Of a stretch of DNA of 64,000 nt, positions 34,810 through 50,812 are shown piece after piece; position 1 is the stretch's first letter, and the number at the start of each line of letters is the position of its first letter. The notes beneath the pieces are model-generated. The model did no database searches, was not told the DNA's origin, and worked only from the letters and a program-made list of their open reading frames with translations. Source of the stretch: Vitrella brassicaformis CCMP3155 (taxonomy: Eukaryota; Protista; Chromerida); the NCBI GenBank assembly GCA_001179505.1, contig CDMY01000781.1, positions 124,001 through 188,000 of the forward strand. Direction: 5' to 3'. Both the position numbers and the translations under genes were made by a program.

Positions 34810-37800
34810 ATGGCTGCCGTAGCTGTGCAGTACAGCCAGGCGCGGCTGCAAGAGTCGCCCTCATTCGGCTCCTCGTACATCAGGTGAACACACACACAGA
34901 ACAGACGAGGGGGGAGGGGGCAGGAGGCGAATACAGATTGGAGGAGGAGAGAGGGTCGTGTGGGTGAGGGGTGAGGTATTTCGTTGTTCTGCTGTGTCTG
35001 TGTGGTGTCAGGGTGGAGGTGGGCAGCACTGTGACGCCCACGACGGTGAGCAGAGGCGTATTCAGCGAGAAAGGCGTGCAGAGTGACACCGCGCCCCCAC
35101 CCACCCACATGACGTCTGTGTTGACTCTACAGGCGTTTCGTTTGGAGGTGTCGCCAGAGAATGCTCCGGTCATCGTCGAAGGGCTCCGACACTTCTTCAG
35201 GTCAGCCAGAAGCGCACCACACACGGCGAGCAACTCATGTCTGTCTGTCTTAATTGCTCTGTTGTGTGTCTGTGTGTGTGCGTGTTTCTGATCTGTGGTT
35301 GATATGATTGATATGTCCATCCATCCATCCATCCATCCATCTGTCCGTCAGGATCTACATCCGCTGTTGGGCCCAATGGGACAAGATCTCTCCCATCGAG
35401 GAGCAGCTCTTCAACGGCACACTCGGCTTCCACACCCTGTCCAACGGCCGCTCCCCCTCATCCGCCTCACCCCCTCACCGAGGCACACCCACACCCACCG
35501 CATCCACCACCACAGAGGTCGTCAACGACAGACAGATCCAGTCCCGCCCTCTCGGCTTCTCCATCTTCTCACGGTCACCGGCAGCTGACAAACCGCCACC
35601 CAGGCGGCCGACGCCAGAAGGGTCGGTGAGCGGTGGGGGCGAGGAGGCGGCAGGTGACGAGGCCACGGCCAGCAAGGCCAAGCGGGAGACGCCCAGGGAT
35701 GGCAAGGGCGGGAAGGGCGTGGGTGCGCAGGGGGCGGCTGCTGGCGTGCGGGGCGGTGGTGGCGGTGGTGGTGGTGAGGTGGTTGAGTCGCCCAAGACGC
35801 GATGGGGTGCGCACAAGGCCAGAGGGATCAGCCTCATGCGAGCGGCGCTCATCGACCAGGCGGCGGTAAGTGGCCAGGGAATGGCTAGAGGGGGGCAGGG
35901 GCAGTATACAAATCATGAGGGGGAGGGTGGATTGAAGTATCTCGTGTGTACTCTGTGTTGGTGGATGGGCGAGTGCAGATAACGATCCAGCGCTTTGCTC
36001 GCGGCAAGAGGAGTCGTGACTTGGCACGGTACCTCAGACTGCTACGCATCTGGGAGGCCACCATGACACCCCACGCCCTCAAGATACAGAGCTTCTTCAG
36101 AGGTCAGTCAGACAGCACATGTCCCGTTGCATTGCACGTCGTGAATTCCCTCCTTCCCTCCCTGTGTGTGAATCCTTCCTTCTGGCATCAATCATTCAAT
36201 TTGCCAGGTTGCAAGGGCCGCGTGAGGGCCGGGTTCCTCAAGTCCATCAAGAGCTACCAAGCACTCAGATTCGTCAAGGCGGTGAGTGAGTGGGCAGATT
36301 AGATGCGCCTCCATTTCATGCAAACACACGACGGACGGACGGATGCCTCTCTCATTGTGTGCTTGGCAGACCCTGATTCAGTCCCACTGGCGGCGTGTCG
36401 TTGCCGTACAGAACCTCCAGCTGGAATATGTGGTCAGCACCAGACACAACACGCGCACACACACAGAGACACATCCCCACCCACCGTGCGCCCGCTTGTC
36501 GATTGGTCGCCGTGTCAGATTCGCGGCATGTTGAAGGTCCGTAGGGACGCTGCGTTGGAGATCGAGCGTGTGTACCGTGGTCACTGTGGGCGTCTGGTGG
36601 CCAAGGAGGAGAAGACGCAGATCGTCTTCAGATGGATCTGGGACGGTCCTGGGCAGAGTGTCGAGGTCAGTCACAGACGAAAGGGACATATGGATCGATG
36701 GATGGATGGATGGATGGATGGCATGCCGTCGTCCATGTGTGTGTGTGTGTGTGTGTGTGCGCAGCTGGTTGGCGACTTCACCGACATGCCATGGCAAGAC
36801 CGACTGAGGATGAGGTGGTGCAACATTCGATCGTAAGCATATCCGCTACACACAGCGACATCCGGCATCAACACCTCATCTCCTGTCTGTCTGTCTGTGT
36901 CAGGTGCTACGTGCGTCCGTGGCGGCGGCGCACAGGCCGGTATGAGTTCAAGTTTCTCGTCAACGGACAGTTCGTCTGCGACGGCAGCCTGCCTGTCGAG
37001 AGGGTCAGCCAGCCACCCACCCACCGAGGCAACCACAAAGCAAAGGGCACAACACACACAACACAGCCTCTCTTTCTCTATCAGGACGAGTTTGGCAATG
37101 TCAACAACGTCATCGAAATCAGAACACTCACACCCAAATTCGGTGAGGCCAAAGAACGCACTAGCAGCTGACCCGGTCAACTCATATGCCATCTGTGTCG
37201 GTGTGTCTTCCCATTCAGTCCACCGTCGTGCCGTCACTCGCGACCCTGCGAGCGCCGAGGGCCAGTTCCGCCGCAACGGCACCGACGACGACCAGGGCGG
37301 CTCATCCAGCGGATCGGGCGACTCGTCGGGCAACGCCAACCACCAGCCGTCGTCCACATCCGGCACTCACTCCCAGTCCAGCACCGGCCGCCCCTCCGCG
37401 ACCCAGGGTGGCCAGCGCACCAGCTCTCAAACGCAGCCCGGCGCCACCACACGGACACAGCCACCGACGGCCACACACACACGACCGGCTGCTTCGATGG
37501 AGTCGGTCCCGTCAGCACCATCTGCCCCATCGGACAACCGTTCGGCCTCGCCGATGAGCACGGGCGATGCGGGCGGGGGGGTGGAGAGGAACCCCACAGT
37601 CGAGGAGAGGGTCACGGGCACCACACCCACCCAGCAGCAACAGCCGTCAGGGCCATCAGGCGTCCCGTCCCCCGCTCCCGAGGCGGTCCCCTCGCCCCCA
37701 TCCATGCCGTCACCACCCCCCGGCCCCCGACCGTCGACCATCGAGCGATCCCGCTCCACAGAGGGGCACCGGCGGCCGTCGAGTGGCTCCATCGGGTCCG

Positions 37801-47251: not shown

Positions 47252-47271
47252 AACCCTAAACCCTAAACCCT
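47252..47271. repeat. Short interstitial telomere-like (CCCTAAA)n repeat / telo-box
   Basis: AACCCTAAACCCTAAACCCT followed by degenerate GCACCCTAT, about 110 bp upstream of the ZIP gene ATG. Confidence 0.7.
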
Positions 47272-47381
47272 GCACCCTATACCGTGTGAGTCGTTCTGGT
47301 CGTTACAGTGGCAGGGGCGGCGTGTCTGGCGAGCAGGACTGTCAGTGAGTTTGCCGCCTGTATCAGGCATATATATCAGGC

Positions 47382-50300
47382 ATGTCGTTGATGGAGCACC
47401 TCGAGACTCAGGCTGCATGGGATCGGAAGCTGTCCTCTGACAGCGGATCACCCTCGGGAGAAGTGGACGCCTATGACATTGCGACGGTAAGCACAGGAAC
47501 AGACGCATAGAAGCGGAAAGGTGGATGTCTGATGTCTGATGTGATGTGTGTGTGTGCGCGGCTCGACTCTCTTTCCAGGCGTTTGGCTGGGGATGTGTGT
47601 CAGCCATTTCTCTGGTCATCGGGGCAGCATGGGGGATCATCCAGCTACCCAACCAGTCCGTTCGCGCCACATTCATGGCCTTGTAAGGTTGAACCAACAC
47701 CAACACACCAACCACGACACACACCCAGACATGCGACACACAGCAACCTCCCTCCCTCCCTCCCTCTCTGTGAATCTCTCAGTGGCGGTGGGGCGCTCCT
47801 GTTTGCCCTCACGCTCGAGCTCTTCGGTGAGGCCTTCGCGGCTATGCATCACGGGGAGTCTGACGACGACATCAGCCAAGCGCGGCTCACCATCGGCATT
47901 ATGATCTGCGGCGCCATCGCCGGCGGCCTCCTCTTTGCCGGCCTCAACAAACTGCTCAACGAGAAGGGCGCCTTCCTGCGCAAGCCCGCCCTGGTCAAGG
48001 GGTACCTGAAGAACCTGCGTCGGCTGTTTGCTCAGGGGCTGGTGCACAAGCTGCGGAAGGTGCCGCTGCTGGCAGGGCTGCCCGAGGAGGACCTCTACCA
48101 GCTGACGACAGAGATGGAGAAGGAGAAGTTCCAGGAGGGCGACACCATCTTCCACGACTTGGACGTCTACAGCTCTCTCTACTTCATCATCTCGGGGCAG
48201 GTCAAGATCGAGCTCCGCACACCCGACCTCAAGAAGGTCGACACGCTCGCACTCATCAATCCGAAGGGCCAGGAGGACACCGAGAACAACCATCTGAGCA
48301 ACGGCAATAATACTGGGAACGACGAGAACGGTGCCTTCGACAGCAAGCCGCTGCTGGTGGCCAACGGCTCCTCCTCCCACGAGGCCCGCCCAGAGAGTAT
48401 CTCCATTCAGCTGCCCACAGTGGACGAGGAGGAGGAGGCAAAGATGGAGGGTCCTGACGAGGGCGGCGGGATTCGGCGCTCGGAGAGCATGCACGACCAC
48501 GCTTTGGGCGACATAGTGGACACGTTCATCGCGGGCCCCAACGACCTGTTTGGGCAGATGTCGTTGCTGGCGGGGATGCCGCTGAGGGCCCAGGCGACGG
48601 CGATGGAGGCGACGCGGGTGCTGCGGATCCCTCACAAGGCGGTGCATCGGCTGCTGACCACCAGCAAGGCGCTGCAGGACCATGTCGAGGGAATGGCCGT
48701 CGAAAGACTTAAGGAAATCGACACCTTCAGACACCTCAGATCAGGTCAGTGAGTAAAGGAGTGAGTGGATCGATGGATGGGGATGGGAGGGGTGTGCTGT
48801 GGCTTCTATGTGTGCATGATATGTATGTGTCCACCTACAGCAACGCTGGCTCGTTTGGTGGGGCGCATGGTGCGCGACGATTTCAATGCGGGGGATGTGC
48901 TGTTCTATGACGTGGATGCCCTCACACCCATCTACTTCGTCGTACTCGGAGAGGTCAGCCAGCCGAAAGGAAGGGTGGTGGGCATGCCTCCCTCGGTCCT
49001 CCTACATGTGTGTGAGAGTGTGGGTGTGGGTGTGTGGGTGTGTGTGTGTCATGATGTCAGATTGAGGTGACATACAACGACGACCGCAACACCACCCGGT
49101 GCTTCACCACCAACTCGATCGTCGGACTCGAACACCTCAGACATGGACGGGCCGTCAGGTACACATACACACACATACACACACATACACACACATACAC
49201 ACACACACACACACGAACATCCCATCCCAGGTGTGTGTCCACCTTGTGTTGTCTTATGCTATGCAGGGCGACGGCCGTCGCACAGGAGCACACCACGGTG
49301 CTCAAGATCCCTCGGTCGGACCTTGACAACCTCACACGCACCGACGAGTCACTCCGCGAGGCACTCACCGCCGACAGAAAGAGCCTGCACGAGAAGCAGC
49401 AGCGGATTCTCAGCGAAGCCGACAAGAAGGCCGGCAAGGGTGTCAGTTTCGCGCCCACACCAGCCGTGAGCCGCCGCCGCATACCCACCATGGCGATGCG
49501 CGTGTCTGAGGCACAGCAAAGGGCGTTTGGGTGGGAGAGAGTGCCTAAGGACATGGTGAGGGCCTGGATGGATGGATGGATGGATGGGCCTCACACAGGG
49601 GAGGGAGATCAAGCGTGTGTGCGCGTGTTTGTGTGTGCGTGTGTGCGTGTGTGGCCAGGATGTGGGCGACTTGAAGGGGCTGGACCATCAGGACATCAAG
49701 CGAGTCCTCTCGACGCCAATCGGCCCCGAAGGTCAGACACAAGCAAGCCCTCACACACACACGCTTTCCTTTCCCGACCTTTTCACAGACATGCATGGCG
49801 CGTCTCTCCGCCGCTTCGCCAGCGGCCTCCCCTCTCCAAAAGCCGCCGTCGAGCGCCGCACCACGGGGGCCCTCGGCATCCGCCGACGCGCATCGTGGGC
49901 AGGGTCCGATACCAGCCCCCATGGGGCAAGAGAGCACCTGACCAGCTTCGAGAACGTCGACCTGCTGTTGACAGACGACGCCGACCCAATCGCCCAGCTG
50001 GAGCAGGCGCACGTGCTGCGTCAGGAGGAGGAAAGCGAGCAGGTCATGGAGAGAGACAAAGGGGAGGTCTCCGAGCACACCCCTTCCACCGCTCCCACAA
50101 GCGTGCCCGCCCCGCCCACGCCGCCGGAGGGGGGCAAGGAGGAGAGAGAGGTGGCTGGTGGCGAGGAGAAGGGGGGCCACGGGGGCAAGAATGCGGCTGT
50201 GATGATTTGGCTGGGGATTCTGATCGACGGCATCCCTGAGAGCATTGTGATCGGCATCCTGTGGGTCACGGCGGGGTACAGCGGGATGCTGGGCTTCCTG

Positions 50301-50812
50301 CTGGGCGTCTTTCTGTCCAACCTCCCCGAAGCCATGTCCAGCTCCGGCACTATGAAGGTCGGTCGGTGAGACAGACAGAGAGACAGTCAGGGGGAGGGAG
50401 GGGACCTCAGAGCTCTCCTACCCTCTGTGTGGGTCCTCCTTGCAGGCTAACGGCATGCGCAAGCGTGTGATAATGAGCATGTGGGGGTCGATCGTCATCA
50501 TCACGGGCATCGGGGCTGCCGTAGGGGCAGCTCTCTTCCCACCCGGCCAGTCGGACAACCCCGAGACGCAGATGATCATCGCAGCCACCAAGGGCCTGGC
50601 CGCGGGGGCGATGCTCACCATGATCGCACAAACCATGCTCCCAGAGGCATTTGATCAGGTAAATGCAGGCGTGGGCGGTGTCCACAGAATGCAGGCGCAC
50701 ACGTGTGTGTGTGTGTGTGTGTGGCATCCATCAGGGTGGCGACATCATCGGTTTGTCGTGTTTGGCCGGGTTTTTGGCCGCCACGGCCGTCAAGCTGCTG
50801 CCCATCAGCTAG
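47382..50812 (+). CDS. ZIP (SLC39/ZupT-like) metal transporter with two cyclic-nucleotide-binding-like domains in the TM3-TM4 loop
   Basis: TM1-3: AFGWGCVSAISLVIG, MAFGGGALLFALTLELF, AIAGGLLFAGLN. cNMP-like 1: LRKVPLLAGL...FQEGDTIF...LYFIISGQVKI...FGQMSLL...ATRVLRI. cNMP-like 2: FNAGDVLF...IYFVVLGEIEV...VGLEHL...TTVLKI. TM4-8: LIDGIPESIVIG, FLSNLPEAMSS, LAAGAMLTMIAQTMLPEAF, GLSCLAGFLAA. Confidence 0.9.

What the first reader, a model, noticed from the sequence alone, without database searches (positions are those of the whole stretch)
47382..50812. ZIP metal transporter with two cyclic-nucleotide-binding domains inserted in its cytoplasmic loop
Seen: one spliced frame has ZIP TM1-3, two tandem cNMP-binding (CAP_ED)-like folds (about 48050-48700 and 48710-49345), a disordered linker, then ZIP TM4-8. 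Established: the TM3-TM4 loop of ZIP/SLC39 proteins is the cytosolic regulatory loop, usually His-rich, and characterised animal, plant and fungal ZIPs carry no CNBD. Inference: this could be a second-messenger-gated or conformationally regulated metal transporter, analogous to CNBD-regulated channels and SLC9C1. The DGIPES-type core resembles prokaryotic ZupT-like proteins, some of which I recall being annotated with a single cNMP domain. A bacterial origin followed by domain duplication is possible. I know of no functional characterisation.
Basis: partly seen in the sequence, partly recalled or inferred. Interest (0 to 1): 0.82.

Follow-up and report, generated by a model that had tools for sequence, protein, structure and literature searches.

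The report
ZIP metal transporter with tandem CNBD loop
This is a real, expressed gene of the alga Vitrella brassicaformis for a ZIP-type metal transporter with two cyclic-nucleotide-binding-fold domains in its cytosolic loop; it belongs to a large, unstudied family found in bacteria and dinoflagellates, but this copy lacks the standard cAMP/cGMP contact residues.

Summary
Window 47382-50812 (+) is one 10-exon GT-AG gene. Single spliced transcript contigs from two independent studies cover every exon. It encodes 867 aa from the first AUG. From residue 4 it is identical to the public Vitrella brassicaformis CCMP3155 protein P0087 (864 aa, auto-named "cyclic nucleotide-binding domain-containing protein").

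The order is ZIP TM1-3, CNBD1 (split by an 86-aa disordered insert), CNBD2, a 220-aa disordered linker, then ZIP TM4-8. Pfam scores both families above their cut-offs. AlphaFold2 gives pLDDT >90 for all folded parts, and the tandem matches PKA-R/PKG CNB-A/B.

The architecture is not unique. Hundreds of bacterial proteins have one CNBD (~450 aa) or two (~610 aa) at the same site, as do many dinoflagellates, Chromera and Balamuthia. I found no paper on the family.

The single-CNBD bacterial forms keep the canonical Glu and Arg of the phosphate-binding cassette. The Vitrella and dinoflagellate domains do not. Regulation by the module is likely; direct cAMP/cGMP gating here is doubtful (about 25%).

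The eukaryotic tandem arose separately from the bacterial tandem. This scan noted a second, frame-broken copy elsewhere in the same genome (s1-231074).

The parts
47311..47381 (+). 5' UTR (minimum extent)
   Evidence: The spliced contig of run X7 begins at 47311. There is no ATG before 47382, and there is an in-frame stop at 47346.
47382..47486 (+). Exon 1: start codon and hydrophilic N-terminus. The public model starts at the second ATG, 47391.
47579..47682 (+). Exon 2: ZIP TM1 and the start of TM2.
   Evidence: Joint 47486/47579 in X1, X7 and X8; family zipN profile.
47783..48744 (+). Exon 3: ZIP TM2-TM3 (to 47978), CNBD1 N-half (48030-48236), an 86-aa disordered insert (about 48237-48533), CNBD1 C-half with its phosphate-binding cassette (48534-48707), and the start of CNBD2.
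   Evidence: Pfam E=1.8e-15 on this exon; family CNBD profile hits at P0087 150-218 and 318-375; pLDDT <50 for residues 219-304.
48841..48953 (+). Exon 4: CNBD2 N-terminal helix and first strands.
   Evidence: Joint 48744/48841 in three runs.
49061..49158 (+). Exon 5: CNBD2 beta-roll with the variant cassette (GLEHL).
   Evidence: X8 contig piece 49059-49153.
49267..49555 (+). Exon 6: end of CNBD2 (to 49366), C-helix, and start of the disordered linker.
49659..49731 (+). Exon 7: linker.
   Evidence: Records X7 and X8 hold about 72 nt between the pieces that end at 49554 and begin at 49787. This is the same in P0087.
49732..49788 (+). A 57-nt in-frame intron that the ORF alone cannot reveal. 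It is removed in the transcripts.
   Evidence: Joint 'skips 57, GT..AG' in X1, X7 and X8; absent from P0087.
49789..50357 (+). Exon 8: disordered linker with an RRRAS site (to 50186), then ZIP TM4 (DGIPES) and TM5 (SNLPEA).
50446..50658 (+). Exon 9: ZIP TM6-TM7.
   Evidence: Joint 50357/50446 in three runs; BbZIP alignment.
50735..50812 (+). Exon 10: ZIP TM8 and stop codon. The 3' UTR continues beyond 50900.

Best explanation
This is an intact, transcribed Vitrella brassicaformis gene for a ZIP-family divalent-metal transporter. It belongs to a distinct, bacterial-type subfamily with the TM4 motif D-G-I-P-E-S and the TM5 motif N-L-P-E-A. Its cytosolic TM3-TM4 loop carries a tandem of CNBD-fold domains. 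Shown here: one mRNA; the eight-helix ZIP core split 3+5; two well-folded CNBD-type beta-rolls arranged like the CNB-A/B pair of PKA-R and PKG; and all family-invariant core residues retained (D725, P728, E729, N756, P758, E759 in P0087 numbering). Inferred: the core carries metal by the elevator mechanism described for BbZIP. It would use a single, all-oxygen site, because His177 becomes Asp, Gln207 becomes Ser, and the M2 ligands Asn178, Asp208 and Glu240 become Gly, Asn and Thr. That ligand set would favour harder cations such as Mn2+ or Fe2+ as much as Zn2+. Also inferred: the CNBD tandem joins TM3 through a short helix and joins TM4 through a ~220-residue disordered linker that contains an RRRAS site. 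It most likely acts as an allosteric regulatory module. In the single-CNBD bacterial relatives the cassette is canonical, so these are plausible cAMP/cGMP-regulated transporters. In Vitrella and its dinoflagellate relatives both cassettes have lost the canonical Glu/Arg placement. Here the module more likely works as a CNBD-homology domain, either ligand-free or sensing a different ligand, than as a classical cAMP/cGMP switch.
For: Gene and mRNA. Domains: Pfam cNMP_binding 96.8 bits and Zip 48.3 bits. Fold: pLDDT >90 for TM1-3, both CNBDs and TM4-8; Foldseek top hits are tandem CNB domains of PKA-R/PKG at E about 4e-11. ZIP homology and site mapping to BbZIP 5tsa. Family invariants. The CNBD sits between the N- and C-terminal ZIP halves in 116 one-CNBD and 31 two-CNBD proteins. 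Cassette statistics: bacterial one-CNBD forms have Glu in 99/101 and Arg in 100/101. Eukaryotic domain 1 has a hydrophobic residue at the Arg position in 41/56 and Arg in 3/56. Eukaryotic domain 2 has a conserved G-T-E-H-L motif and Arg in 4/22. In Vitrella, domain 1 reads FGQ...P-L-R-A-Q and domain 2 reads G-L-E-H-L...V-R-A-T-A. In alignments to PKA-R cassettes the canonical Arg aligns with Leu.
Against: There is no experimental datum for any family member. Both Vitrella cassettes carry an Arg one position after the canonical one. Domain 1 has Gln where, from my memory of Epac1, a cAMP-binding cassette also has Gln. So cNMP binding is not excluded. AlphaFold2 says nothing about ligands. P0087 has Lys817 where 90% or more of the family has Glu, so its transport properties may differ from the family norm. 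Metal specificity is inferred from ligand chemistry only.
Confidence: 0.6

Rival explanations
1. One reading: the Vitrella protein is a true cAMP- or cGMP-gated metal transporter. Cyclic nucleotide binds one or both CNBDs and opens or closes the transport cycle.
For: Both CNBD folds are confident, with hinge and C-helices. They resemble ligand-binding PKA-R/PKG tandems. An Arg is present one residue after the canonical position in both cassettes. The bacterial one-CNBD relatives have fully canonical cassettes.
Against: The canonical Arg position is Leu in domain 1 and Val in domain 2. The canonical Glu is Gln in domain 1 and Leu in domain 2. The +1 Arg is not conserved in the nearest relatives, which have Gln or His there. 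From my own knowledge, CNBD-fold domains without the Arg, such as the KCNH CNBHD and trypanosome PKA-R, do not bind cAMP. The PDB titles for the cAMP-independent trypanosome PKA-R appear.
Confidence: 0.25
2. The ZIP core no longer transports. The protein is a membrane-anchored sensor or scaffold (a 'transceptor').
For: His177, Asn178, Gln207, Asp208 and Glu240 of BbZIP are all replaced. Vitrella has Lys817 at a position that is Glu in 90% or more of the family.
Against: The same replacements are invariant across hundreds of bacterial and eukaryotic members. That indicates a conserved, selected site rather than decay. The two P-E glutamates and the TM4 Asp and TM5 Asn are invariant in 88 sequences. 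CNBD-less relatives with the same core exist (P0055-57).
Confidence: 0.08
3. The architecture is a gene-model artefact: separate CNBD and ZIP genes that were wrongly joined.
For: None remains. It was a legitimate worry, because Pfam Zip scores only E about 0.01 on single exons.
Against: Single spliced contigs from two studies cover all exons. The frame is open across all nine junctions. Intron-free transcriptome ORFs of dinoflagellates (for example P0015 and P0066) and contiguous bacterial genes have the same order.
Confidence: 0.01

Closest known systems
BbZIP (Bordetella bronchiseptica ZIP; PDB 5tsa, 8ght, 7z6m), the structural reference for the ZIP/SLC39 family
   Same: TM4-TM8 align at E=5e-5. 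The P-E glutamates of TM4 and TM5 (E181, E211) and the G-L-A-A-G-A-M helix of TM7 are kept. The helices are arranged 3+5 with a cytosolic TM3-TM4 loop.
   Different: H177 becomes D, N178 G, Q207 S, D208 N and E240 T, so the second metal site is largely gone and no His or Met ligand remains. The loop is about 580 aa with two folded domains, not short.
Bacterial ZIP-CNBD proteins (about 450 aa with one CNBD, for example P0004 Acidobacteriota and P0001; about 610 aa with two, for example P0048 and P0242 Magnetospira). NCBI names them only 'cyclic nucleotide-binding domain-containing protein'.
   Same: They share the same ZIP subfamily motifs, the same insertion point directly after the conserved N-x-K-G-A-F-L-R-K segment following TM3, and the same domain order.
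   Different: The one-CNBD forms have the canonical F-G-E...P-R-[TS]-A cassette. The bacterial tandem forms are a separate clade whose two domains duplicated within that clade, and they carry His at the Arg position. They lack the disordered insert and the long linker.
Dinoflagellate and chromerid homologues (Prorocentrum cordatum P0180/P0101, Gymnodinium smaydae P0015, Biecheleria, Ansanella, Scrippsiella, Ceratium; Chromera velia P0187, auto-named 'Zinc transporter ZIP11')
   Same: They fall in the same eukaryotic cluster in the ZIP-core tree (SH-aLRT 92-98). Domain 2 forms one clade together with Vitrella (96). Long disordered linkers and variant cassettes are shared.
   Different: Vitrella sits on a long branch, has Arg at cassette position +1 in both domains, and has Lys817. 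Some relatives have lost any detectable CNBD (P0095-97, P0086).
SLC9C1 (sperm Na+/H+ exchanger) and CNG/HCN/MlotiK1/SthK channels, which are CNBD-regulated membrane transport proteins
   Same: In concept: a cytosolic CNBD coupled to a transport domain. This rests on my own knowledge and is an analogy only.
   Different: In those proteins the CNBD is C-terminal with a canonical cassette, and the transport folds are unrelated. Here the domains are inserted inside the transporter between two helices.
CNNM/CorC Mg2+ transporters with a CNBH domain, and the KCNH channel CNBHD
   Same: A CNBD-fold domain on a metal or ion transporter that lacks the cNMP-contact Arg and acts without cyclic nucleotide (my own knowledge). 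Pfam CNBH_CNNM2_C gave a weak hit, E=6e-4, on the bacterial tandem protein P0052.
   Different: There is no sequence-level membership. Position in the protein and the partner transport domain both differ.

Membership tests
ZIP / SLC39 (Pfam PF02535, TC 2.A.5) | Whole-protein score above the Pfam gathering threshold | tested here: met
   P0087 scores 48.3 bits against a cut-off of 35.1. The CNBD-less relative P0055 scores 71.5 bits over profile positions 34-321.
ZIP / SLC39 (Pfam PF02535, TC 2.A.5) | Eight transmembrane helices arranged 3+5 around a variable TM3-TM4 loop | tested here: met
   Hydropathy peaks. AlphaFold2 helices 27-53, 58-90, 94-127, then 710-860, all with pLDDT >90.
ZIP / SLC39 (Pfam PF02535, TC 2.A.5) | Metal-coordinating glutamates of the x-x-P-E motifs in TM4 and TM5 (BbZIP E181, E211) | tested here: met
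   E729 and E759 align to them and are invariant in 88 family sequences.
ZupT / GufA subfamily of ZIP | Passes the NCBIfam ZupT equivalog model; H-N-x-P-E-G motifs in TM4 and TM5 | tested here: not met
   NF003243 scores 32 bits on the bacterial relative P0004 and 24 on P0055 (cut-off 252), and there is no hit for P0087. TM4 reads D-G-I-P-E-S and TM5 reads S-N-L-P-E-A. The ZupT motif itself is from my memory.
Cyclic nucleotide-binding domain fold (Pfam PF00027) | Score above the gathering threshold, and a beta-roll with flanking helices | tested here: met
   96.8 bits in three stretches. Strands and helices have pLDDT >90. Foldseek to PKA-R/PKG tandems gives E=4e-11 at probability 1.0.
Functional cAMP/cGMP-binding CNBD | Phosphate-binding cassette with Glu (ribose 2'-OH) and Arg (phosphate) at the canonical positions | tested here: not met
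   Domain 1 has Gln and Leu. Domain 2 has Leu and Val. An Arg follows one position later in both. Relatives do not conserve it.
Functional cAMP/cGMP-binding CNBD | Measured binding of cAMP or cGMP | not testable with these tools
   Needs ITC or a fluorescent-analogue assay on the purified domain.
CNBD-regulated transporters (SLC9C1-like, by analogy) | Transport activity modulated by ligand binding to the CNBD | not testable with these tools
   Needs a flux assay with and without ligand.

The most novel reading that the evidence does not exclude
The tandem CNBD-fold module of the eukaryotic ZIP-CNBD proteins, and independently that of the bacterial tandem forms, has been re-tuned to sense something other than cAMP or cGMP. 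The pocket carries conserved His and Glu: the G-T-E-H-L motif plus His or Arg at cassette position +1 in eukaryotic domain 2, and His at the Arg position in 57 of 61 bacterial domain 2 sequences. The ligand could be a nucleoside, as in trypanosome PKA-R, or the transported metal itself. If it were the metal, this would be a ZIP transporter with a built-in, folded cytosolic metal-feedback sensor.
Probability: 0.2. Interest if true: 0.8.

Novelty: new variant of a known kind. Interest (0 to 1): 0.55.

Why it matters
How ZIP/SLC39 transporters are regulated after translation is poorly understood. The only known loop elements are short His-rich, disordered segments. A large natural family carrying a folded ligand-sensor domain in that same loop offers a tractable system. 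Its bacterial one-CNBD members keep a textbook cAMP/cGMP cassette. They could show how a cytosolic signal couples to an elevator-type metal carrier, and whether second messengers control metal uptake directly. In alveolates the family is abundant in dinoflagellates and chromerids. There, the loss of the canonical cassette with retention of the fold raises the question of what these domains now sense. The specific Vitrella gene is already in public databases, so the value lies in the family and its unstudied mechanism, not in this locus.

Tried and rejected
- ESM Atlas feature search with exon 3 returned only generic bacterial cNMP_binding clusters at 0.87-0.90, with no information on architecture.
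- Six literature searches found nothing on ZIP-CNBD fusions. The terms were ZIP + CNBD + zinc transporter; ZupT/GufA/cNMP; PF02535 + PF00027; ZIP family + CNBD + cAMP; Vitrella + zinc transporter; and dinoflagellate + ZIP + CNBD. The pan-domain ZIP survey PMC5751234 never mentions cyclic nucleotides or fusions.
- The context of two bacterial genes (L001, L002/L003) showed no conserved neighbours. There was no cyclase or metal operon, though a GGDEF response regulator lies upstream in L001. I dropped gene context as a source of functional clues.
- My first splice model (886 aa) kept a 57-nt in-frame intron. Transcripts and P0087 corrected it to 867 aa.
- The idea that the eukaryotic tandem descends from the bacterial tandem forms was rejected by the ZIP-core and CNBD trees.
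- I did not run the large representative-protein search, because relatives were found by the word search.
- Procedure: I joined exons only inside local scripts. This was to check the reading frame, run hydropathy, and compare with proteins and profiles already fetched or built here. Those searches used exon references or the public protein P0087.
Full report
**What is in the sequence**

The ORF list and the raw sequence show a GC-rich (about 60%) eukaryotic locus. Its coding pieces are separated by short introns rich in TG/CA repeats.

I traced GT-AG junctions by hand and checked them by script. This gave an open frame from the ATG at 47382 to the stop at 50810-50812. The public protein P0087 is identical to that model, with two differences: it starts at the second ATG (47391), and it removes a further 57-nt in-frame intron at 49732-49788. 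P0087 is from Vitrella brassicaformis CCMP3155. NCBI calls it 'unnamed protein product' and UniRef calls it 'Cyclic nucleotide-binding domain-containing protein'. The window is therefore from the Vitrella brassicaformis genome.

The final model has ten exons and nine introns of 57-108 nt. It encodes 867 aa from the first AUG of the transcript. No ATG lies upstream in the 5' UTR, and there is an in-frame stop at 47346.

**Transcript evidence**

Among public runs that hold this stretch, run X7 (2013) and run X8 (2015) come from different studies. Each contains one spliced contig, 3421 nt and 3303 nt long, running from the 5' UTR (47311 in X7) to beyond 50900. Four joints are listed explicitly, including the 57-nt one. 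The piece boundaries and the contiguous numbering within each record fit the model's other exon ends. A third run, X1, shows four of the joints. Runs of this set that keep the introns (X6) behave as DNA.

That test fails: it is one mRNA.

**Domains and fold**

| Feature | Result |
|---|---|
| Pfam cNMP_binding on exon 3 alone | E=1.8e-15 |
| Pfam cNMP_binding on P0087 | 96.8 bits, three stretches, cut-off 27.5 |
| Pfam Zip on P0087 | 48.3 bits, cut-off 35.1 |

A family-specific CNBD profile that I built from bacterial relatives places the domains as follows:
- CNBD1 lies at P0087 residues 150-218 plus 318-375, interrupted by an insert.
- CNBD2 lies at residues 373-491.
- ZIP halves lie at 31-132 and 712-861.

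I ran AlphaFold2 with an 88-sequence family alignment. It gave pLDDT above 90 for TM1-3, both beta-rolls with their helices, and TM4-8. It gave below 50 for the insert (219-304) and for most of the 516-709 linker. Foldseek's best PDB matches are tandem CNB-A/B domains of PKA regulatory subunits and PKG (E about 4e-11, probability 1.0).

**The ZIP core**

TM4-8 align to BbZIP at E=5e-5. Mapped to BbZIP's metal sites:

| BbZIP residue | Location | In this protein |
|---|---|---|
| H177-N178-x-x-E181 | TM4 | D-G-x-x-E |
| Q207-D208-x-x-E211 | TM5 | S-N-x-x-E |
| E240 | TM6 | T |

The two glutamates, the TM4 Asp and the TM5 Asn are invariant across the 88 aligned family members. So this is a conserved, distinct site, not decay. 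From ligand chemistry I infer a single all-oxygen site and a possible preference for harder cations. That is inference only.

The NCBIfam ZupT model scores far below its cut-off on the relatives it hits, and does not appear for P0087. No NCBIfam model covers the family.

**The family**

A word search with exon 3 returned 57 proteins, nearly all carrying both Pfam domains. Searches with the dinoflagellate protein P0015 and with P0087 returned 244 and 399 cluster representatives. There are three size classes:
- About 450 aa with one CNBD. Named examples are metagenome-assembled genomes of Acidobacteriota, Myxococcota, Bdellovibrionales, Gammaproteobacteria and others.
- About 610 aa with two CNBDs. 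Examples come from Planctomycetota, Desulfobacterales, Prosthecochloris and Magnetospira thiophila.
- 620-1055 aa eukaryotic forms.

The eukaryotic forms include Prorocentrum cordatum genome proteins, and transcriptome ORFs of Gymnodinium smaydae, Biecheleria cincta, Ansanella granifera, Abedinium dasypus, Scrippsiella and Ceratium. They also include Chromera velia (925 aa, auto-named ZIP11) and Balamuthia mandrillaris (712 aa, auto-named 'cAMP protein kinase regulatory chain').

In every case the CNBD sits between the N- and C-terminal ZIP halves. Two bacterial loci showed stand-alone genes without informative neighbours.

**Evolution**

On the ZIP core, the eukaryotic proteins including Vitrella form one cluster. 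Its support is 98 in the first tree and 92 after adding Chromera and more sequences. The bacterial tandem forms are a separate, distant clade.

On the CNBDs:
- The two domains of the bacterial tandem forms group with each other (support 96), which points to a duplication inside that lineage.
- Eukaryotic domain 2 is one clade that includes Vitrella (96). Eukaryotic domain 1 clusters separately (89).

So the tandem predates the Vitrella-dinoflagellate divergence of this gene, and it arose independently of the bacterial tandem. Whether eukaryotic domain 2 is a copy of domain 1 is unresolved.

Balamuthia sits on a long branch near the bacterial one-CNBD forms, and its placement is unsure. Some eukaryotic relatives have no detectable CNBD (P0095-97, P0086, P0088).

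**Is it a cyclic-nucleotide sensor?**

Residues at the phosphate-binding cassette, by group:

| Group | Canonical Glu position | Canonical Arg position |
|---|---|---|
| Bacterial one-CNBD forms | Glu in 99/101 | Arg in 100/101 |
| Bacterial tandem, domain 1 | R, W or H | mostly His |
| Bacterial tandem, domain 2 | mostly Gly | His in 57/61 |
| Eukaryotic domain 1 | Asp or Glu | hydrophobic in 41/56; Arg in 3/56 |
| Eukaryotic domain 2 | conserved G-T-E-H-L motif | Arg in 4/22 |

The full cassette of the bacterial one-CNBD forms is F-G-E...P-R-[TS]-A-[TD].

Vitrella domain 1 reads F-G-Q...P-L-R-A-Q and domain 2 reads G-L-E-H-L...V-R-A-T-A. When aligned to PKA-R cassettes, the canonical Arg pairs with Leu. 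Both Vitrella domains have an Arg one position later, but the closest relatives have Gln or His there.

From established knowledge, CNBD-fold domains without this Arg do not bind cAMP. Examples are the KCNH CNBHD, the CNNM CNBH domain and trypanosome PKA-R. Epac shows that Gln in place of the Glu is tolerated.

I therefore rate classical cAMP/cGMP gating of the Vitrella protein at about 25%. I rate a regulatory module that is ligand-free or senses another ligand as more likely. The bacterial one-CNBD members remain good candidates for true cNMP-regulated metal transporters.

**Known or new**

Six full-text searches and a look into the pan-domain ZIP survey found no description of ZIP-CNBD proteins. 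The architecture is visible in automatic annotation for this gene and for hundreds of others, so the locus itself is not a discovery.

This scan had already flagged a second Vitrella copy on another piece of the genome. A follow-up agent called that copy frame-broken, and also described the family as real, widespread and untested (s1-231074). I reached the same view of the family independently. I could not examine that other copy. The copy in this window is intact and expressed.

**Verdict**

- This is a new variant of a known kind: an uncharacterised ZIP subfamily with folded sensor domains in the regulatory loop.
- Interest is moderate. The most attractive experimental entry point is the bacterial one-CNBD members rather than this gene.

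Noticed in passing
window 47254-47275: A telomere-type repeat (CCCTAAA, two full units plus part of a third) lies about 40 bp upstream of the first transcribed base seen (47311). It is the only such match in the 64-kb window (expected 0.01 by chance). It may be a telo-box-like promoter element.
   Followed up: partly
window 47500-50730 (introns): Most introns of this gene carry (TG)n/(CA)n microsatellite runs. The reads tool skipped several of these as repeats (47736-47776, 49004-49052, 49154-49223).
   Followed up: no
P0087 residue 817 (window about 50520): Vitrella has Lys at a TM7-proximal position that is Glu in 90% or more of 88 family members (the x-G-x-E-G-L-A-A-G-A-M motif).
   Followed up: no
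P0191 (Balamuthia mandrillaris, 712 aa) and P0187 (Chromera velia, 925 aa): Both homologues are misleadingly auto-named: 'Camp protein kinase regulatory chain' and 'Zinc transporter ZIP11'. The Balamuthia protein sits on a long branch near the bacterial one-CNBD forms. It may be a separate transfer or contamination.
   Followed up: partly
P0095-P0097, P0086, P0088: These eukaryote-cluster relatives (419-696 aa) have the same ZIP core and a long loop but no detectable CNBD. This suggests secondary loss or decay of the sensor domains.
   Followed up: partly
bacterial tandem forms, e.g. P0048, P0052, P0044 (61 proteins of 595-620 aa): His replaces the phosphate-binding Arg in both CNBDs (33/61 in domain 1 and 57/61 in domain 2), and the cassette Glu is absent. 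This is a conserved non-canonical pocket with an unknown ligand.
   Followed up: partly
P0087 residues 611-616 (window about 49880-49900): A basic R-R-R-A-S-W motif, a PKA/PKG-type consensus site, lies in the disordered linker between CNBD2 and TM4. Its conservation could not be judged in the unalignable linker.
   Followed up: no
window 35970-37130: Another first-stage note in this window describes an IQ-repeat plus CBM48 fusion (s1-233382). I did not examine it.
   Followed up: no
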